Both the position numbers and the translations under genes were made by a program. Below are positions 5,378 to 19,241 of a stretch of 19,663 bases of DNA, piece after piece. The stretch is from Piromyces finnis finn (taxonomy: Eukaryota; Fungi; Neocallimastigomycota): the NCBI GenBank assembly GCA_002104945.1, contig MCFH01000185.1, positions 1 to 19,663 of the forward strand, written 5' to 3'. The notes beneath the pieces were generated by a model that had not been told where the DNA came from, did not search any database, and saw only the letters and a program-made list of their open reading frames with translations. Each line of letters begins with the position of its first letter. Within the stretch, counting starts at the first letter, position 1.

Positions 5378-5831
5378 TTTATTTGACTTATTTTCTTGAA
5401 TATTGTTAATTTTATTATTATAATTTATTATATAATATTAAACATATATGTAATTAAGTATTGATATGTTAAATCCTACGATATATATTAAAAAAGATAG
5501 AGGAAAATTTTATTGAATAACATATGTATATATTAATATTTATACTTTTTTTTTTAATTCTCCATAAATAATCTTAAAAAATTTATTAAATATTAAAATA
5601 TTCTATAAATACATTTTTTTAATAAAATTTATAATTTCAAAGATAAAAAAAAAAGTTTATATTTTAATTTTTTATTTTTTTATATTTAAATTGGTTATTA
5701 TTTTTTAATAAATTTTTAATTATTTTTACATATTATATAATATTATATAGGCATAAATATTATAAACATTTTTTCTTACTTATACCTAATAATGTGTTTA
5801 TTTTTCTCGAAATATTTTAATTAAATATTAA

Positions 5832-9327: not shown

Positions 9328-9416
9328 CATCATCATCATCATTATTATTATTATTATTATTAAATATTATTATTATTAAATATTATTATTATTATTATTA
9401 TTTTTTATTATTATTA

Positions 9417-9452
<36 letters not shown>

Positions 9453-9489
9453 TTATTATTATTTTATATTATTATTATTATTATTATTA

Positions 9490-9524
<35 letters not shown>

Positions 9525-9534
9525 TATTATTATT
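9328..9534. repeat. (CAT)n followed by imperfect (ATT)n microsatellite, about 200 bp
   Basis: Directly visible; ends about 200 bp outside the left palindrome arm. Confidence 0.9.
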
Positions 9535-10003
9535 AACATTTTAAATTGACCATATTTCGCAATAAAAAATAAATAAATTTTATTTTTTTTATTTTAAAAT
9601 TAAATATCAACTATAAAGTATTTTATAAATGTTGACAAAGGTACTAACTAAAATAATTTATCTAATATCTAATAAAATTAACAATAAAATAGTTACTAAT
9701 GTAATAAATAATTATTTATTAACTAAATAGTTATGTTTTTAATTTTTTTTTTATTTTTTTTATTTTTTGTATAGATTTAAATAAATTATTTGTTATATAT
9801 ATTACAATATATCGTTTTTATATAGAATATTTTTAAAAAAAATATTTTAAAAGAATATTTTACAAAAACAATTTTCATAAAATAAAAACAAATATTTATC
9901 TATATATTATTTTGAAATATTTTAAAAAAAATATTAAATATATTACATTAAAAATTTAAAAAATAAATTTAATTTATATTAGTAAATTTTTAGTAGTGAA
10001 TTT

Positions 10004-11293
10004 TTAGTAGTGTCTGTGATTCTTCTTCTTATCTTTCTTCATTTGTTTAAGAAGATTCTTTGCTTCTTCAAGATATTCTTTGGCTTCTTCAAGTTCTTCT
10101 TCTTCAGCTTCAATGTCACTGCTATTGTTGCTATCATCAACAGCAACAGCACTTTCATCATCATCTTCACCTTCAACTTCAACATCACTATCATTCTTAC
10201 ATTGTTCAAGATCCTTGTTTTCTTCTAAATCACAATCTGGTTCATCACCGTCATTTTCATCATCGTCGTTTTCATCACCGTTATTATCATTTTCATTATC
10301 ATTTTCATTGTTACCTTTTTTACATTCAGAAAGATCAGCATTTTCTGGAAGAGAACAGTAGCATTCTTGAACATCACTGTTTTCTGGCTTTGAACAATCT
10401 AAAGTATCATCAGTCTTACATTCTGGTAATTCACTGTTTTCTGGTTTGGAACAATCAACCTTACATTGTTCATTGTCCTTGTTTTCTGGTTTGGAACAGT
10501 CAACCTTACATTGTTCATTGTCCTTGTTTTCTGGTCTGGAACAATCAACCTTACATTGTTCATTGTCCTTGTTTTCTGGTTTGGAACAGTCAACCTTACA
10601 TTGTTCATTGTCCTTGTTTTCTGGTTTGGAACAGTCAACCTTACATTGTTCATTGTCCTTGTTTTCTGGTTTGGAACAGTCTGGAGCTGGAACTGGAGTT
10701 TCTTCTTCAGTCTTACATTCTGGTAATTCACTGTTTTCTGGTTTGGAACAGTCTGGAGCTGGAACTGGGGCTGGAACTGGAGTTTCTTCTTCAGTCTTAC
10801 ATTCTGGTAATTCACTGTTTTCTGGCTTGGAACAGTCAATCTTACATTGTTCATTATCCTTGTTTTCTGGTTTGGAACAGTCAACCTTACATTGTTCATT
10901 GTCCTTGTTTTCTGGTTTGGAACAGTCAACCTTACATTGTTCATTGTCCTTGTTTTCTGGTTTGGAACAGTCAACCTTACATTGTGGTAAATATTTGAAT
11001 TCTGGTTTAGAACAGTCAATTATTGGAATGATTGGTGTTGGTACAATTTGAGTTGGCTTTGGAGCAACTGTGGTAGTTGGAATAGATGGAGTAGGAATAG
11101 ATGGTATAGAAGGAACGGATGGTGTATTCCATCCCCAATTCCACCAATTCCAACCTGAATTATTATTATTGTTGTTGTTGTTGTTGTTGTTTCCCCATCC
11201 CCAGGAATCCCAACCCCAGCAAGGTAAACCAAAGACTTGAGATTGAGAAAGTAAGACACTAACTAAAACGGCTGAATATAATTTGTTGTACAT
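10004..11293 (-). CDS. Secreted Cys-rich repeat protein of unknown family, copy A (429 aa, intact, no introns)
   Basis: Single ORF: signal peptide MYNKLYSAVLVSVLLSQSQVFG; Trp/Gly/Asn block; Pro/Thr linker; 15 C-X10-C modules (consensus VDCSKPENKDNEQCK); acidic D/E/N region; helical acidic-to-basic tail EEELEEAKEYLEEAKNLLKQMKKDKKKNHRHY. GC content is clearly above the flanks. Confidence 0.92.
   Translation of the reverse strand: MYNKLYSAVLVSVLLSQSQVFGLPCWGWDSWGWGNNNNNNNNNNNSGWNWWNWGWNTPSVPSIPSIPTPSIPTTTVAPKPTQIVPTPIIPIIDCSKPEFKYLPQCKVDCSKPENKDNEQCKVDCSKPENKDNEQCKVDCSKPENKDNEQCKIDCSKPENSELPECKTEEETPVPAPVPAPDCSKPENSELPECKTEEETPVPAPDCSKPENKDNEQCKVDCSKPENKDNEQCKVDCSKPENKDNEQCKVDCSRPENKDNEQCKVDCSKPENKDNEQCKVDCSKPENSELPECKTDDTLDCSKPENSDVQECYCSLPENADLSECKKGNNENDNENDNNGDENDDDENDGDEPDCDLEENKDLEQCKNDSDVEVEGEDDDESAVAVDDSNNSSDIEAEEEELEEAKEYLEEAKNLLKQMKKDKKKNHRHY
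10415..10975 (-). repeat. 45-bp coding tandem array in copy A (11 units with two TEEETPVPA-type linkers)
   Basis: Order: 3x KDNEQ, SELPE, linker, SELPE, linker, 5x KDNEQ, SELPE. Confidence 0.93.
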
Positions 11294-13414
11294 TTTCCCT
11301 TTTTAATCCAGTAAACCTTAAACTTTAAGACTAATTGAAAAGATTTTTTTAATATAAATTAAAATAAATATTTTATATTTTATATTTACAGGCAGGTTTT
11401 TTTAAAAACTTTGATTTTTAAAATTTTTATATAGATAAATATTATAAATATTTAAATTTTTTAATAATTGATAATTTTCAAAAAATTTTTACAGAAAAAT
11501 ATTATAGAAATATATTTGATTGAAAAAATGCTAAATATATATTTCGATAATATTTATAAATGTTTTATAAATGTTTTTTTTTAATAGTTGTAAATACAAT
11601 AATACTATTTTAGTATGTTATAATTTAATAATTATTTAAAATAAAATGAAAATAAAAAAATTTATTTTTTTTTAAAATAATAAACTTTTGATGTTATTTA
11701 AATTTTATATATATTACAATAATATAAATAAGAAAATTGTTTTTGTAAGTTAATGAAGATAAAATTCAGTCTTTTTCGACAATATTTATACTATTTTGAA
11801 ATATATTAACATTTTTAAATAAGTAGTATTTTATTATCACAACATCATCTATTTTATTATAGTTATTTTTATATATTTAATTTTTAAATTTAATCTTTAT
11901 TAACTAAAAATAATATAATTTATTAATGTTGTAAACAAATATATAAAAAATAATTTCTGTTTTTTATAAACTATTTTTAAATTGATTTATTTATTTTAAT
12001 AATATATACACATTCTATTTTTGATAGTTAAAATAATTTTTTATAATTATATTATATATTTATACAAAAATAATTTTTTATAATTATATTATATATTTAT
12101 ACAATAATAATATTTTTTATAATTATATATTTATACAGTAATAATATTTTTTATAATTATATATTTATACAGTAATATTCAAATTAATTTGATGTATTGT
12201 TTTTTATTAAATATTATTGTTTTTATTAAATACAAAATCAATTTTTTTTTTTTTTTAGATTGCCGTTTATATTATAAATCTATATGAATATGTTTTTATT
12301 TCTTTAAAATGTAATACAAACAATTCATAGAAAAAAAATAAAATATTTAAAATTTAAATACTGTTAAGTTTATTTTTATAAAATTTTATATAAAAATTAA
12401 AACTTTACATAATCATTATTTGGTATATAAAAATACGGTTAAATTAATGTAATCATTATACATATTATATAGATAAAAGAAAAAAGACGGTAATTTTTAT
12501 ATATACAAATTTACTTTTAAAAGATATATTTTTAAGTTGTATTTTTGATTTAAATAAAAGTTTATATGTATATTTTTAAATGTTTATTTCTATTAGCTTT
12601 ATATTTTTCTTATATTTTTTTATTTTTGATATTAAATATATATTTATATTTTTTATTTAATTGTAAATACTTCATATATCACATTAAAGCAAATTAATTA
12701 TAAAATAATTTTGTATATTATTGAATATTAATCCATTTATTAAAGATATTTATATTTTTAATTTTATTTTTCAATTAACCAAAAGAAATATTTACAAATT
12801 ATTAATTTTTTCAAATTAGTATTTACAAATTTTAATCTATATCAATATATTTTAATTTACTAAGCGTTAGAAGTTTAAATAGATTTTTTTTTAATTTCAA
12901 AATAGTATAAATATTGTCGAAAAAGACTGAATTTTATCTTCATTAACTTACAAAAACAATTTTCTTATTTATATTATTGTAATATATATAAAATTTAAAT
13001 AACACTTTAAATCAATTTATCAAAAGCTTTTTTTAAAAAAAATAAATTTTTTTATTTTCATTTTATTTTAAATAATTATCAAATTGATAACATACTGAAA
13101 TAGTATTATTGTATTTACAACTATTAAAAAAAAACATTTATAAAACATTTATAAATATTATCGAAATATATATTTAGCATTTTTTCAATCAAATATATTT
13201 CTATAATATTTTTCTGTAAAAATTTTTTGAAAATTATCAATTATTAAAAAATTTAAATATTTATAATATTTATCTATATAAAAATTTTAAAAATCAAAGT
13301 TTTTAAAAAAGCCTGCCTGTAAATATAAAATATAAAATATTTATTTTAATTTATATTAAAAAAATCTTTTCAATTAGTCTTAAAGTTTAAGGTTTACTGG
13401 ATTAAAAAGGGAAA
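11294..13414. promoter_or_regulatory. Divergent (head-to-head) intergenic region between copies A and B: duplicated ~510-520 bp proximal regions around a unique 1091-bp spacer
   Basis: Position between the two ATGs; no ORF in the track. Promoter function is inferred from position only. Confidence 0.5.
12030..12179. repeat. AT-rich minisatellite, 34-37 bp x4 plus a partial copy, in the palindrome spacer
   Basis: Units end in tatttatac at 12065, 12102, 12136 and 12170; the core ttttttataattat(att)atatttatac is shared. Confidence 0.8.
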
Positions 13415-15306
13415 ATGTACAACAAATTATATTCAGCCGTTTTAGTTAGTGTCTTACTTTCTCAATCTCAAGTCTTTGGTTTACCTTGCTGGGGTTGGGA
13501 TTCCTGGGGATGGGGAAACAACAACAACAACAACAACAATAATAATAATTCAGGTTGGAATTGGTGGAATTGGGGATGGAATACACCATCCGTTCCTTCT
13601 ATACCATCTATTCCTACTCCATCTATTCCAACTACCACAGTTGCTCCAAAGCCAACTCAAATTGTACCAACACCAATCATTCCAATAATTGACTGTTCTA
13701 AACCAGAATTCAAATATTTACCACAATGTAAGGTTGACTGTTCCAAACCAGAAAACAAGGACAATGAACAATGTAAGGTTGACTGTTCCAAACCAGAAAA
13801 CAAGGACAATGAACAATGTAAGGTTGATTGTTCCAAACCAGAAAACAAGGACAATGAACAATGTAAGGTTGACTGTTCCAAACCAGAAAACAAGGACAAT
13901 GAACAATGTAAGGTTGATTGTTCCAAACCAGAAAACAAGGACAATGAACAATGTAAGGTTGATTGTTCCAAACCAGAAAACAAGGACAATGAACAATGTA
14001 AGGTTGACTGTTCCAAACCAGAAAACAAGGACAATGAACAATGCAAGATTGACTGTTCCAAACCAGAAAACAAGGACAATGAACAATGTAAGGTTGACTG
14101 TTCCAAACCAGAAAACAAGGACAATGAACAATGTAAGGTTGACTGTTCCAAACCAGAAAACAAGGACAATGAACAATGCAAGATTGACTGTTCCAAACCA
14201 GAAAACAAGGACAATGAACAATGTAAGGTTGACTGTTCCAAACCAGAAAACAAGGACAATGAACAATGTAAGGTTGACTGTTCCAAACCAGAAAACAAGG
14301 ACAATGAACATGTAAGGTTGACTGTTCCAAACCAGAAACAAGGACAATGAACAATGTAAGGTTGACTGTTCCAAACCAGAAAACAAGGACAATGAACAAT
14401 GTAAGGTTGATTTCCAACCAAAACAAGGACAATGAACAATGTAAGGTTGATTGTTCCAAACCAGAAAACAAGGACAATGAACAATGCAAGATTGACTGTT
14501 CCAAACCAGAAAACAAGGACAATGAACAATGTAAGGTTGACTGTTCCAAACCAGAAAACAAGGACAATGAACAATGTAAGGTTGACTGTTCCAAACCAGA
14601 AAACAAGGACAATGAACAATGTAAGGTTGACTGTTCCAAACCAGAAAACAAGGACAATGAACAATGTAAGGTTGACTGTTCCAAACCAGAAAACAAGGAC
14701 AATGAACAATGTAAGGTTGATTGTTCCAAACCAGAAAACAAGGACAATGAACAATGTAAGGTTGATTGTTCCAAACCAGAAAACAGTGAATTACCAGAAT
14801 GTAAGACTGAAGAAGAAACACCAGTTCCAGCTCCAGCTCCAGCTCCAGCTCCAGACTGTTCCAAACCAGAAAACGGTGAATTACCAGAATGTAAGACTGA
14901 TGATACTTTAGATTGTTCAAAGCCAGAAAACAGTGATGTTCAAGAATGCTACTGTTCTCTTCCAGAAAATGCTGATCTTTCTGAATGTAAAAAAGGTAAC
15001 AATGAAAATGATAATGAAAATGATAATAACGGTGATGAAAACGACGATGATGAAAATGACGGTGATGAACCAGATTGTGATTTAGAAGAAAACAAGGATC
15101 TTGAACAATGTAAGAATGATAGTGATGTTGAAGTTGAAGGTGAAGATGATGATGAAAGTGTTGTTGCTGTTGATGATAGCAACAATAGCAGTGACATTGA
15201 AGCTGAAGAAGAAGAACTTGAAGAAGCCAAAGAATATCTTGAAGAAGCAAAGAATCTTCTTAAACAAATGAAGAAAGATAAGAAGAAGAATCACAGACAC
15301 TACTAA
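13415..15306 (+). CDS. Secreted Cys-rich repeat protein, copy B (632 aa if 7 nt missing at 14310-14421 are restored); frameshifted as given
   Basis: ORF 13415-14350 has an N-terminus identical to copy A, and ORF 14347-15306 has a C-terminus nearly identical to copy A. Deletions against the 45-nt consensus: 1 nt at ~14310, 1 nt at ~14336, 5 nt in the unit at 14406-14445. 1892+7=1899 nt=633 codons. Confidence 0.85.
13733..14895 (+). repeat. 45-bp coding tandem array in copy B (25 units, one linker)
   Basis: 23 consecutive [V/I]DCSKPENKDNEQCK units (13733-14760), then SELPE, linker TEEETPVPAPAPAPA, then GELPE. Confidence 0.93.
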
Positions 15307-15596
15307 AAATTCACTACTAAAAATTTACTAATATAAATTAAATTTATTTTTTAAATTTTTAATGTAATATATTTAATATTTTTTTTTTAAAATATTTCAA
15401 AATAATATATAGATAAATATTTGTTTTTATTTTATGAAAATTGTTTTTGTAAAATATTCTTTTAAAAATATTTTTTTTAAAAATATTCTATATAAAAACG
15501 ATATATTGTAATATATATAACAATAATTTATTTAAATCTATACAAAAAATAAAAAAAATAAAAAAAAAATTAAAAACATATATTAAAAACTTAGAA

Positions 15597-15965
15597 ATTT
15601 ATTTTATTTTATTTTATTTTATTTTATTTTATTTTATTTTATTTTATTTTATTTTATTTTATTTTATTTTATTTTATTTTATTTTATTTATTTTATTTTA
15701 TTTTATTTTATTTTATTTTATTTTATTTTATTTTATTTATTTTATTTTATTTTATTTTATTTTATTTTATTTTATTTTATTTTATTTTATTTTTATTTTA
15801 TTTTATTTTATTTTATTTTATTTTATTTTATTTTATTTTATTTTATTTTATTTTATTTTATTTTATTTTATTTTATTTTATTTTATTTATTTTTATTTTA
15901 TTTATTTTATTTTATTTTATTTTATTTTATTTTATTTTATTTTATTTTATTTTTATTTTATTTTA
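15597..15965. repeat. (ATTTT)n pentanucleotide microsatellite, about 370 bp
   Basis: Near-perfect ATTTT units with occasional ATTT/ATTTTT variants, starting 16 bp after the right arm ends. Confidence 0.95.
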
Positions 15966-17405
15966 TATTTATAATCTCGAAAAAATATAATTTTTATTTT
16001 CTTTTTCTTTTCTTTTTTTTTTTTTTTAAGATGAATTTTCAATATTCAACACTTTTATTTTTCTTTTCGTTTTCTTGTAACACATGTATTGGTTATATAA
16101 AAGTAGTTTTTATTTAAATGGGTTTTCGATATTCCATTTTTTTATTTTTTTATTTTCTTTTTATTGTAACTTACTTATTAGCTATAAAAAAAAAGAGTTT
16201 TCACTCTCTTAATAATGAATTTACTTTTCTTTTTTCTAATTTATTAATAAATTGTTTTTTGTGGGATGACAAAAAACTATTTTTATGGAGGTTGAATTCT
16301 ATTAATACAAAATTATAAAAAAAAAAAGTTTTAAATAAAAAAGGATTTTTATTTATTCCTATATTTTTTATATATTATATCAAACTTTTTTTTTTATTTT
16401 TGATGGTTACTTGTAAAATAATAATATCTTTAAACATCAATATAATAAATAGTATATTTATAAATAAATCAACCTATTTCACTTTCTTTTTTTTTTTTTT
16501 TTTTTATTTTATGACATCTTAAATAATTTTTTTTTTTTTATTATTTTATTTTATTTTTTTAATATGCATATATATATACATTGGCTATATTCAAAAGTAT
16601 AAAATAACACTACGATGTAATAAATCGTAGTATACATGAAAAAATTTATAATAAATGTATTTATTTAAATAGGATATGTATCATTATATAAAATATAAAA
16701 TGAAATAGTGATAAAAAGAATTTATAGTTTTAAATAATATATATTGTTATGATTATAATTAAACAAATAAAAAAAAAAAAAAGAATAATAATTAAAAATG
16801 ATATATCTAGATATGGATAGTTGTATATAAATAAATTATTATTATTATTATTATCATTAAAAGAATATTTTTTAATAATAATAATTATAATAATTATAAT
16901 AATTATAATTTAATAATATCTAAGTAAAGTTTTTTTTTAAAAAAAAAAAAAAAAAGTAAAGTATTTTTACATTTAATTTTATCTAAAGTATAGAGTATGT
17001 ATTCTAATAATTTTGATTTAATATTTATAATTAAAAATCTTTGATAATATTAATGATGATTTTTAGTAATTTTAAAGTTTATAATCAAATCATTGAAAAT
17101 TGTAAAACCTTTCTTTTTCCTCTTTTTTCATTATTCTTTTTAACCAGCAATAAATGTCTTTTTTTTTAAAAAAAAAAAAAAATCGCTTAAAACCATTTAA
17201 AACCAATTTAGGCATTTCATTGATTTAATATTCGTGATACTGACATATTTCATTTCTTTATTTTACAAAGATTACCAATGATATTATTATTAATATTCTT
17301 ATTCTATAAAATTGATTTTAAATTATTGGTAAAGTAATTGAATTTATATATATATATATTTCCTAAAAAAAAAAAAATTCATAAAAATAATTTTTTTTTT
17401 TTTCA

Positions 17406-19241
17406 TTATTGGTATCCCATTATTGACAATTCCTTATCTTGATCTGGATTTTCATTAAATTTAGGTTGTATTTGTTGTTGTGGATCATGTGTTTGATTAT
17501 AATTATCAATTAGAATACAGTTATTTATTAATTGGGACATAATTTGTTCATTATCCATACTATTTGATATAGATGATGTTAAGGATGATATACGTTTTGG
17601 TCTTTTGGCTAAAGCTCGTTTATGGTCATTCTGTTCAAAAGGTGTTATTAAATTATGATGTGTTGATGATGAATTTGCCAAAGCATTTTCATTGTAATGT
17701 GTATTACTCTTTCCATTGTCTGTACCAGAAGAAGAATAAAGTGGAGGTTTTTCAATGAAATAGGGTTTAGTTTTTTTCTGAACTTTCCTCTGTATCATCC
17801 AAAAATTTAATGGCTGATAGACTTGAATCACGAGGAGGAGTGGATAGGAATTACTTTTACGACAAGAATTTCTATGATTTTTATTTACATTTGGGGAAGG
17901 AAGATGAGGATCTTTGGAGTGACCTAATTCACCTAATATAGGAGTCCATTCTGTCTCTTTTGAATTTGCTACTGTTGGTATTGTAGGATTACCACCGCTT
18001 GAAGAACCAACACCAACACAAATTAAAGAAGAATCTCTAGGCTTAACATCTGATTTAGTTAATATTGATTTTAATTCACTAGACGAGCTATAATTGACAT
18101 TTCCATAGATATTCTTGGCATTTATACTTATTAACATAGCAGGTGATTCGTCTATGATGAATGAAGAATTTTTCAGAGAAGGTTTCTATTAAGAATCACT
18201 AATATCAATGGATTCCTTTGGAATATTTATTGATGACCTGATACCTGAGGAATATTATAGTCATCATCAAGCGGTTTCGAAGTCATTGAAGTATCACTTG
18301 TAAATGGATGAAACAAGGATATGTCTTCAATTGGTGGAAGAATATAAGAGCTTTTAATGTCATTATTATTACTACTATTTAAGAATGAAACGTTTGGTGG
18401 TCCATTTTGGAAAGAACTATTGTAATTGTTGGTAGTATCCATAGAAGAGAAATTAATATCAGTATCAACAACAATGGAATTTTCATTATAACCATTATTA
18501 TAATTATTATTATTATTATTATTATATTTTGGTATATTACGAGTGACTTTTTGACGATTATTAATATTTTTAATAATTTTTAGTAATAGATCAGATTTTC
18601 TTCGGTAGTACATTAAGAAGGTTATCACAATAAAAAAGACAAAAATTAATACAACAATGATAATGAATATAATCAAAAGTGTTTTATAATCTCTTTTATT
18701 TTTTTCACTCGAATTTATGGTATTATCAATTTTAGTATTTGTATTTTTAGAAGTGCTAGAAGCATTGGAAATTGTAGATGTTATCTTTGGGATAGTCTTA
18801 TTCATATTATTATTATCATTATTATTATTATTACTATTATTGTTGTTATTGTTGTTACCGTTATTTTCCACAAGAGTTGTCCTTGCGATTGTTGTAGTAT
18901 CTAATGCTTCGTTATTTTGATTATTATCAAGAATTGTATCATTTGTTAAGGTAGTATTATTATTATTAACATCCATATCCATATTATCACTATCTTTTGT
19001 GGCTATAGTATTAGTATCACTATTATTGTTATTATCATTATTTATTTCAATATTGTTGTTGTTGTTGTTGTTGCTAATATCCCCTAGATCATCATTTATA
19101 GTATCACTATTAATTATTTTATCATTTTTTTAGTATTGTTATTTGTTTTATTTTGGTAGCTTTTGTTTCAGGAGAATCTTCAGTTTGAACTTTTATTATT
19201 AGTATTATTATTTTTAATAATAATGATAAAATAGTTGTCAT
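17406..19241 (-). CDS. Asn/Thr/Ser-rich single-pass (type I) membrane protein of unknown function; start and joins uncertain
   Basis: Candidate signal MTTILSLLLKIIILIIKVQT (ATG 19241). A frameshift at ~19125-19150 leads into the frame of ORF 18227-18982 (Asn/Thr-rich ectodomain, TM TLLIIFIIIVVLIFVFFIVITFLMYY, then RRKS). A 59-nt GTATC..TTAATAG intron (18244-18186) would join it in frame to ORF 17406-18137 (low-complexity cytoplasmic tail). Confidence 0.6.

What the first reader, a model, noticed from the sequence alone, without database searches (positions are those of the whole stretch)
9732..15580. 5.85-kb gene-bearing palindrome: two head-to-head copies of a secreted repeat protein, homogenised outside the array but different inside it
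Seen: arms of 2071 and 2687 bp around a unique 1091-bp spacer, with unique DNA on both outer sides. The N-terminal coding region is identical, including (AAC)7(AAT)4. After the array I found one substitution in the C-terminal region (A/V, 10149 vs 15161), and the ~270-bp 3' flanks match apart from homopolymer length. The arrays differ (11 vs 25 units, different order). Established: inverted arms can undergo arm-to-arm gene conversion, and a crossover between them inverts the intervening DNA. Inference: a crossover inside the arrays would flip the spacer and both promoter/N-terminal halves and re-pair them with the other C-terminal half at a new register. That would generate new array lengths without losing DNA, giving a possible built-in diversifier and dosage doubler for a surface or secreted protein. 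This is the best candidate for an undescribed system in the window.
Basis: partly seen in the sequence, partly recalled or inferred. Interest (0 to 1): 0.8.

Follow-up and report, generated by a model that had tools for sequence, protein, structure and literature searches.

The report
Mirror-image gene pair in gut fungus
Two mirror-image copies of a gene for a secreted repeat protein really do sit head-to-head in the anaerobic gut fungus Piromyces finnis, but this is an ordinary inverted gene duplication, probably kept alike by copy-correction, and nothing shows it works as a built-in diversity generator.

Summary
The palindrome is real. The window is the whole contig MCFH01000185.1 of Piromyces finnis. 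Arms 9732-11802 and 12894-15580 flank a 1,091-bp spacer. Each arm carries the promoter, coding sequence and 3' flank of a secreted protein made of 15-aa C-X10-C modules (13 versus 27). Homologues turned up only in anaerobic-fungus genomes and AT-rich metagenome contigs.

The same locus on the 483-kb contig MCFH01000042.1 has an intact 632-aa ORF with identical units. These are therefore consensus errors of a redundant, poorly polished contig.

The two assembled versions differ only by 1-nt indels and one SINE insertion. They share spacer orientation and both arrays.

Outside the arrays the arms differ by 13 events, 10 of them in an 82-bp promoter patch. That mosaic fits arm-to-arm gene conversion. 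The arrays carry more private changes than the rest of the arms.

Nothing supports a programmed diversifier: no recombinase and no alternative isomer. This is a known kind (sex-chromosome palindromes, C. elegans inverted gene pairs). The scan has already noted many gene palindromes elsewhere in this genome.

The parts
9732..11802 (-). Left arm. It holds a complete transcription unit: 509 bp upstream, the coding sequence and 272 bp of 3' flank.
   Evidence: BLAST of the two arms and junction alignment.
10004..11293 (-). Short-array gene, an intact 429-aa ORF. Domain order: signal peptide, Trp/Asn-rich head, Pro-rich linker, 13 C-X10-C modules, acidic region, charged helical tail.
   Evidence: The identical protein is encoded on contigs MCFH01000185.1 and MCFH01000042.1. 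No Pfam family matches.
10400..11017 (-). Short array. Unit order: F, 3 K units, two long S units (84 and 72 nt), 5 K units, one 57-nt S unit.
   Evidence: Unit parse and TRF.
11611..11692 (-). Diverged promoter patch, left-arm side.
   Evidence: 6 substitutions and 4 indels against the other arm, present in both contigs. Clustering p<5e-7.
11803..12893 (.). Unique spacer: 1,091 bp, 10% GC, no ORF of 44 aa or more. It holds a 34-bp tandem repeat with 4 copies at 12030-12171.
12894..15580 (+). Right arm. It holds the same transcription unit with the long array.
13005..13097 (+). Diverged promoter patch, right-arm side.
13415..15306 (+). Long-array gene. In this window it is broken into ORFs 13415-14350 and 14347-15306. 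On the main contig it is an intact 632-aa ORF (L001 5979-7877, minus strand).
13691..14910 (+). Long array. Unit order: F, 23 K units, one 90-nt S unit, one 57-nt unit.
14311..14420 (+). Three clustered deletions of 1, 1 and 5 nt relative to the main contig. These are consensus errors, not a pseudogene.
   Evidence: Window-versus-L001 difference list and unit lengths of 44, 44 and 40 nt.
10149..10149 (-). The only coding difference between the arms outside the arrays (Ala in the short copy). Its partner position is 15161 (Val in the long copy).
   Evidence: present in both contigs.

Best explanation
This is a real inverted segmental duplication in the nuclear genome of Piromyces finnis. One whole transcription unit (about 0.5 kb of promoter, the coding sequence and 0.27 kb of 3' flank) was copied in reverse orientation 1.1 kb upstream of itself. 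The gene belongs to a family of secreted proteins for which I found homologues only in anaerobic-fungus genomes and AT-rich metagenome contigs. The result is two divergently transcribed genes.

Shown:
- Both copies are intact (429 and 632 aa).
- The breaks seen in the window's right copy are consensus errors of a redundant, poorly polished contig.

Inferred:
- The unique parts of the arms are kept almost identical by occasional arm-to-arm gene conversion. This has left an unconverted 82-bp patch in the promoter.
- The 45-nt coding minisatellites change faster and independently within each copy, by replication slippage or unequal sister-chromatid exchange. That would explain 13 versus 27 modules with private variants.
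- The module array is probably an extended, disulfide-stapled stalk, so the two genes give a short and a long version of the same protein and roughly double its dose.
- Inversion of the spacer by crossover between the arms is possible in principle. It is expected to be rare and is not a dedicated mechanism.
For: Structure:
- Sharp arm boundaries, a unique spacer and unrelated outer flanks carrying different genes.
- The same structure, orientation and arrays appear in two contigs of assembly GCA_002104945.1. These contigs differ by a 665-bp SINE insertion and about 60 one-base indels, and by no credible substitution.
- The long copy is an intact 632-aa ORF in L001.

Gene conversion:
- Outside the arrays the arms differ by 8 substitutions and 5 indels.
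- Ten of these 13 events fall within 82 bp, and 0 of 2,000,000 simulations placed 9 or more events in such a span.
- The remaining 1,372 bp differ by 0.15%.

Arrays evolving separately:
- Private unit variants and a different unit order.
- A higher density of private point variants than in the flanks (p=0.011).

Protein:
- A signal-peptide-like N-terminus (read by eye).
- Homologues only in anaerobic-fungus genomes and AT-rich metagenome contigs.
- The same C-X10-C 'PEN' module forms the stretch between a globular part and a membrane anchor in unrelated proteins P0001, P0002, P0009 and P0016.

Precedent:
- Frequent conversion and rare inversion in the human Y palindrome P6 (PMC3723533).
- Actively maintained inverted gene pairs in C. 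elegans (PMC1803023).
- Other mirror-image gene copies noted in this genome by the scan (unchecked notes).
Against:
- The two contigs come from one read set and are not independent.
- Conversion is inferred from a mosaic in a single genome. A single complex mutation in the promoter of a very young duplicate would give the same picture.
- The outgroup test failed. In Piromyces sp. E2 the syntenic homologue has a 3.4-kb run of N starting 46 nt upstream of its ATG.
- Expression of either copy was not tested.
Confidence: 0.6

Rival explanations
1. This is a very young inverted duplication with no gene conversion at all. The arms are alike simply because little time has passed. The arrays differ because coding minisatellites mutate orders of magnitude faster than unique DNA. 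The promoter patch is one complex mutational event, or a local slippage-prone AT-rich stretch.
For: - Only 2 differences in 1,372 bp outside the patch.
- The patch lies in AT-rich, low-complexity DNA and includes four small indels.
- No palindrome was seen at the homologues in L005 or in the metagenome contigs L006-L011.
- Only a plus-strand copy is visible in Piromyces sp. E2.
Against: - Ten events in 82 bp flanked by 110 bp and about 590 bp with 0-1 differences is hard to get from one event.
- The arrays also hold private point substitutions, not only changes in unit number. This suggests more elapsed time than the flanks show.
- The E2 comparison is blinded by an assembly gap.
Confidence: 0.28
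2. This is an active recombinational diversifier. Frequent crossovers between the inverted arrays would flip the spacer and re-pair N- and C-terminal halves at new registers. A cell population would then carry many array-length combinations.
For: - The geometry allows it. The inverted arrays share up to 272 nt runs at 93-99% identity in many registers.
- Ectopic recombination between cell-surface paralogues creating chimaeric alleles is known in yeast (PMC3512402).
Against: - Two assembled versions of the locus have the same orientation and identical arrays.
- Each array keeps private variants and its own unit order.
- The eight largest ORFs of the window have no recombinase or nuclease domain.
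- In the best-studied palindrome, crossover resolution is rare compared with conversion (PMC3723533).
Confidence: 0.06
3. This is an assembly artefact: either a fold-back chimeric long read, or two alleles of a single-copy gene joined head-to-head.
For: - The window contig is a low-quality redundant contig with many 1-nt deletions.
- The assembly comes from one long-read data set.
Against: - Fold-back chimeras give spacerless, identical arms. Here there is a 1,091-bp unique spacer, different arrays and private arm variants.
- Joined alleles would have homologous outer flanks. Here the flanks carry different genes: GH114 on one side and a 727-aa protein on the other.
- The 483-kb contig shows the same structure.
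Confidence: 0.04

Closest known systems
Gene-bearing palindromes of mammalian sex chromosomes (human Y P1-P8, X palindromes; PMC3723533, PMC8981503)
   Same: - Inverted arms around a unique spacer.
- Complete genes in the arms.
- Arm identity above 99%, ascribed to arm-to-arm gene conversion.
- Spacer inversion is possible but rare.
   Different: - The arms here are 2-2.7 kb, against 9 kb to 1.45 Mb.
- The host is a fungal genome, not a sex chromosome.
- The arms hold a coding minisatellite that has escaped homogenisation.
- Conversion is inferred here from one genome, not from a phylogeny.
Long inverted repeats with divergent or convergent homologous gene pairs in Caenorhabditis (Zhao et al. 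2007, PMC1803023)
   Same: - Kilobase-scale inverted duplicates of single genes together with their intergenic DNA.
- In the nematodes the structure is conserved more than the sequence, implying active maintenance.
   Different: Conservation across species could not be shown here, because of the assembly gap in Piromyces sp. E2.
Fungal cell-surface genes with intragenic coding tandem repeats, and ectopic recombination between paralogues (FLO family, HPF1; PMC3512402, PMC7263189)
   Same: - An in-frame minisatellite (45 nt) in a secreted protein.
- Unit number differs between paralogues.
- Recombination between paralogues could make chimaeras.
   Different: - There is no Ser/Thr-rich or GPI-anchor architecture.
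- The modules are Cys-X10-Cys.
- No sequence similarity was detected.
- The paralogues are in inverted, adjacent position.
Programmed DNA inversion systems (Hin/Gin/Cin invertases, shufflons, fim switch; from general knowledge)
   Same: A DNA segment bounded by inverted repeats whose inversion could re-pair gene halves.
   Different: - There is no site-specific recombinase.
- There are no short defined crossover sites.
- The promoters lie inside the arms, not in an invertible segment.
- This is a eukaryotic nuclear locus.
- No second orientation was seen.
Other mirror-image gene copies noted by this scan in the P. finnis genome (PFL, GH11 xylanase and GH48 palindromes; notes s1-180597, s1-173706, s1-182280)
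   Same: - The same genome.
- Head-to-head gene copies around spacers of about 1.1-1.4 kb.
- Near-identical arms with diverged promoter parts.
   Different: - This one carries a repeat-protein gene whose arrays differ two-fold.
- I did not re-check the other cases.

Membership tests
Gene-bearing palindrome maintained by arm-to-arm gene conversion | Two inverted arms around a unique spacer, with unique DNA outside | tested here: met
   The same structure is on the second contig.
Gene-bearing palindrome maintained by arm-to-arm gene conversion | Each arm holds a complete, intact gene | tested here: met
   ORFs of 429 aa and 632 aa in L001. The window's right copy is broken only by consensus errors.
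Gene-bearing palindrome maintained by arm-to-arm gene conversion | Arm identity far above that expected from the age of the duplication (concerted evolution shown with an outgroup) | tested here: inconclusive
   A mosaic of 0.15% and about 7% divergence within the arms supports it. The Piromyces sp. E2 orthologous locus has a 3.4-kb N gap where a partner copy would lie.
Gene-bearing palindrome maintained by arm-to-arm gene conversion | Molecules spanning both arms; arm read depth twice that of a single copy | not testable with these tools
Programmed DNA inversion / shufflon-like diversity system | A dedicated site-specific recombinase encoded at or near the locus | tested here: not met
   The eight largest ORFs of the window have no recombinase domain. 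Called genes in the 21-kb locus L001 are GH114, SBP_bac/7tm_3 and uncharacterised proteins.
Programmed DNA inversion / shufflon-like diversity system | Both orientations (or several isomers) coexist in a population | tested here: inconclusive
   Two assembled versions show one orientation and identical arrays. Minor isomers cannot be excluded without reads.
Fungal secreted or cell-surface proteins with coding minisatellites (FLO/ALS/HPF1 type) | An in-frame tandem repeat whose unit number varies between copies | tested here: met
   45-nt units; 13 versus 27 modules.
Fungal secreted or cell-surface proteins with coding minisatellites (FLO/ALS/HPF1 type) | Ser/Thr-rich repeats and a C-terminal GPI-anchor signal; sequence similarity to the family | tested here: not met
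   The C-terminus is charged (…KKDKKKNHRHY) with no hydrophobic tail. There is no Pfam hit. No such relatives appeared in the exhaustive search.

The most novel reading that the evidence does not exclude
Anaerobic gut fungi may routinely amplify highly used secreted-protein and fermentation genes as small spacer palindromes. In this case, occasional inversion-type crossovers between the oppositely oriented coding minisatellites would move modules from one copy to the other without net loss. A clonal, possibly asexual population would then hold a reservoir of stalk-length variants of a secreted protein. I found no description of this for fungi in the literature searches.
Probability: 0.07. Interest if true: 0.65.

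Novelty: new member of a known kind. Interest (0 to 1): 0.3.

Why it matters
On its own this is a clean small example of a gene palindrome in an early-diverging fungus. It gives a short and a long isoform of an uncharacterised secreted protein family seen so far only in anaerobic gut fungi.

The main value is cautionary and contextual:
- The apparent pseudogene is an assembly error.
- The window is a redundant contig of a locus that is better assembled elsewhere.
- The palindrome is one of many that the scan has noted in this genome.

A genome-wide census of such palindromes in Neocallimastigomycota would be more informative than this single case. It should record arm identity, spacer length and gene classes. 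My literature searches found no such description.

Tried and rejected
Read-level check
- All later work on the arms used local scripts or protein queries.
- No ORF of 30 aa or more spans any arm junction, so junctions could not be looked up in run assemblies through the look-up of encoding contigs.

Protein identity
- Pfam gave nothing.
- The word search gave only two distant repeat matches.
- The Atlas gave no usable relatives, and its own model has pLDDT 0.47. I therefore did not spend a structure prediction.
- A word search restricted to the N-terminal region was blank.
- A JGI metagenome scan with the N-terminus was blank.
- The exact protein is not in the clustered collection.

Age of the palindrome
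- The homologue in another Neocallimastigomycetes genome (L005) is single and not syntenic.
- The metagenome homologue contigs stop in poly(A) runs upstream, so they are uninformative.
- The Piromyces sp. E2 syntenic locus is blinded by N gaps.

SINE head
- ARAGORN and Rfam gave no match.

Readings rejected
- Fold-back chimera or joined alleles: the spacer is unique, the arrays differ and the flanks are unrelated.
- Pseudogenised right copy: it is intact on the main contig.
Full report
**What the window is.** The 429-aa protein of the left arm is encoded, letter for letter, on two records of assembly GCA_002104945.1. One is MCFH01000185.1, which is 19,663 bp long and is the window itself. The other is the 483-kb contig MCFH01000042.1, of which positions 348,765-370,054 were fetched as L001. 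MCFH is the genome of Piromyces finnis Pirfi3, an anaerobic gut fungus from a horse (PMC6712302; PMC11406404). This fits the composition: 9-14% GC between genes and 30-38% in coding DNA.

**The window is a redundant copy of a locus on the main contig.**
- It is collinear with L001 over its whole length.
- The difference list shows about 60 one-base indels, mostly bases missing from the window.
- No credible substitution was found. The six 'mismatches' all lie in microsatellites.
- L001 carries one 665-bp insertion that the window lacks.
- The window is therefore a poorly polished copy of the same locus, assembled apart probably because some molecules lack that insertion.

- The arms are 9732-11802 and 12894-15580. 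The spacer is 11803-12893, which is 1,091 bp at 10% GC.
- The boundaries are sharp, and the DNA outside the arms is unrelated. A GH114 gene lies on one side and a 727-aa protein gene on the other.
- Each arm carries about 510 bp upstream of the ATG, the coding sequence and 272 bp downstream. That is a whole transcription unit.
- From 104 nt upstream of the ATG through the N-terminal coding part, including (AAC)7(AAT)4, the arms are identical.
- After the arrays there is one coding substitution, A/V at 10149/15161.
- The arrays differ:
  - Short array: F, 3 K units, two long S units (84 and 72 nt), 5 K units, and a 57-nt unit.
  - Long array: F, 23 K units, one 90-nt S unit, and a 57-nt unit.
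It gives 13 versus 27 C-X10-C modules when the last two variant modules are included.

- In the window the right copy is not one open frame. The units beginning at 14276, 14320 and 14409 are 44, 44 and 40 nt long. The net loss is 7 nt, and a stop follows at 14348-14350.
- On L001 the same copy is an intact 632-aa ORF, with the same 27 modules in the same order and with the same synonymous variants.
- The seven missing bases are among the window-versus-L001 indels.
- They are consensus errors in the middle of the array, not a pseudogene.

**Arm-to-arm comparison on the better contig.**
- Outside the arrays, 785 + 669 aligned bp differ by 8 substitutions and 5 indel events.
- Ten of these 13 events lie in an 82-bp patch 320-400 nt upstream of the ATG (window 11611-11692 and 13005-13097).
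- The 110 bp on the spacer side of the patch are identical. The roughly 590 bp from the patch to the array have one substitution.
- In 2,000,000 random placements of 13 events, none put 9 or more in 82 bp.
- The rest of the arms differ by 2 substitutions in 1,372 bp, or 0.15%.
- Counted conservatively, the short array has 6 private point variants in 585 nt of module cores (odds ratio 7.1, p=0.011).
- Arm identity is thus a mosaic: almost perfect over most of the unique parts, old-looking in one promoter patch, and intermediate with independent unit turnover in the arrays.
- That is the pattern expected if gene conversion occasionally copies one arm onto the other over collinear sequence. The arrays cannot pair in a single register, so they would evolve mainly by slippage or unequal sister-chromatid exchange within each copy.
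- A very young duplication plus one complex promoter mutation is the main rival. I cannot exclude it from a single genome.

**Is there any sign of switching?**
- The two assembled versions of the locus can be told apart by the insertion in L001 (15574-16236).
- That insertion is a 0.53-kb SINE-like retroposon with an (A)130 tail and a 13-nt target-site duplication, ATAATATTATATA. The empty site is in the window at about 5734-5749.
- Both versions have the same spacer orientation and identical arrays.
- This is weak evidence: two consensus sequences from one read set. It does speak against frequent flipping or unit exchange.
- The eight largest ORFs of the window have no recombinase domain.

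**The protein.**
- It has a signal-peptide-like start (MYNKLYSAVLVSVLLSQSQVFG|LP, read by eye).
- Then come a Trp/Asn-rich head, a Pro-rich linker, the module array (consensus DCSKPENKDNEQCKV), an acidic region and a charged helical tail.
- There is no Pfam family, and the Atlas's own model is of low confidence.
- An exhaustive HMMER search found N- or C-terminal homologues only in two kinds of sequence:
  - AT-rich metagenome contigs: P0004, P0005, and P0026 on 24 contigs read (listed in 28 index blocks).
  - Another Neocallimastigomycetes genome: P0008 in L005.
- None of those loci shows an inverted partner.
- The module alone also occurs in unrelated proteins. It lies between a globular part and a C-terminal membrane helix in P0002, P0009 and P0016. 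In P0001 it lies directly after a lipoprotein-type signal.
- I infer that the array is an extended, disulfide-stapled stalk. The two genes would then encode a short and a long version.

**Age of the palindrome.**
- The neighbouring 727-aa gene (P0034) has an orthologue in Piromyces sp. E2 (P0035).
- Six kb downstream of it, on the same strand, lies one homologue of the repeat protein (L012 19104-20989, about 40% identity).
- This corresponds in side and orientation to the P. finnis short copy.
- However, a 3.4-kb run of N starts 46 nt upstream of its ATG, and another run of N sits inside its array.
- A hidden inverted partner therefore cannot be excluded, and the concerted-evolution test remains open.

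**Comparison with what is known.**
- The structure and the inferred dynamics match gene-bearing palindromes of sex chromosomes. There, conversion is frequent and crossover (inversion) is rare (PMC3723533).
- They also match the kilobase-scale inverted gene pairs of Caenorhabditis that are actively maintained (PMC1803023).
- Length variation of coding minisatellites and chimaera formation between cell-surface paralogues are known from yeast (PMC7263189, PMC3512402).
- The defining features of programmed inversion systems (a recombinase, coexisting isomers) were either not met or could not be shown.
- Earlier notes of this scan list 66 palindrome observations in this genome. One follow-up concluded that mirror-image copies of a fermentation gene and a xylanase gene are real and partly homogenised, with spacers of 1.2-1.4 kb that look like ordinary intergenic DNA. 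I did not re-test those.
- My literature searches found no description of such palindromes in Neocallimastigomycota.

**Verdict.**
- This is a new member of a known kind.
- The diversifier idea remains an untested possibility, with a probability of about 0.06-0.07.

Noticed in passing
whole window versus L001 (MCFH01000042.1:348765-370054): The window contig is a redundant, poorly polished copy of a locus on the 483-kb contig. It shows about 60 one-base indels and no credible substitution. These errors also break the neighbouring gene: window ORFs 17406-18137 and 18227-18982 are pieces of one 727-aa protein (P0034). Any 'pseudogene' call on this contig should be checked against contig 42.
   Followed up: yes
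L001:15574-16236; empty site at window ~5734-5749: A 0.53-kb SINE-like retroposon with a pure (A)130 tail and a 13-nt target-site duplication (ATAATATTATATA) is present on the main contig and absent from the window contig. This is a presence/absence difference within one isolate's assembly, so the insertion is very recent, or the nuclei or haplotypes are heterogeneous. It has a B-box-like GGTTCGACCCC near its 5' end, but ARAGORN and Rfam give no match. The scan has noted the same element type with a 13-bp TSD elsewhere.
   Followed up: partly
P0001, P0002, P0009, P0016: The 15-aa C-X10-C 'D-C-[ST]-[KL]-P-E-N…P-E-C' module is not in Pfam. It recurs as a stalk next to the membrane anchor in unrelated proteins from metagenomes. 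These include a lipoprotein with a beta-helix-like C-terminal part and MGN-starting proteins with a C-terminal membrane helix. It is a candidate for an undescribed linker module shared across kingdoms.
   Followed up: partly
L006-L011 (JGI and ENA metagenome contigs): A homologue (N-terminus 60% identical) occurs on 24 contigs read (28 index blocks listed), spread over several samples, and its upstream DNA is nearly identical in the six contigs compared. In L006, the one translated, the reading frame changes several times inside the module array. Possible causes are short introns, collapsed repeats or a decaying gene; this is not resolved.
   Followed up: no
window 9341-9535 and 15598-15972: Long microsatellites, (ATT)66 and (TTTAT)75, lie just outside the two outer arm boundaries. 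The latter starts 18 nt after the right arm ends. They may mark fragile or fork-stalling sites involved in the duplication, but this is speculative.
   Followed up: no
L012:15648-19058 (Piromyces sp. E2, KZ151043.1): A 3.4-kb N gap starts 46 nt upstream of the syntenic homologue. Its size is close to 'spacer plus one inverted copy' in P. finnis. The gap could hide a collapsed partner copy.
   Followed up: partly
L005:5194-8181 and 14471-15754: In the other Neocallimastigomycetes genome, the short homologue lies between a gypsy-type retroelement pol ORF (995 aa) and a FLYWCH/MULE transposase gene. Its N-terminal part is in another frame than the rest.
   Followed up: no
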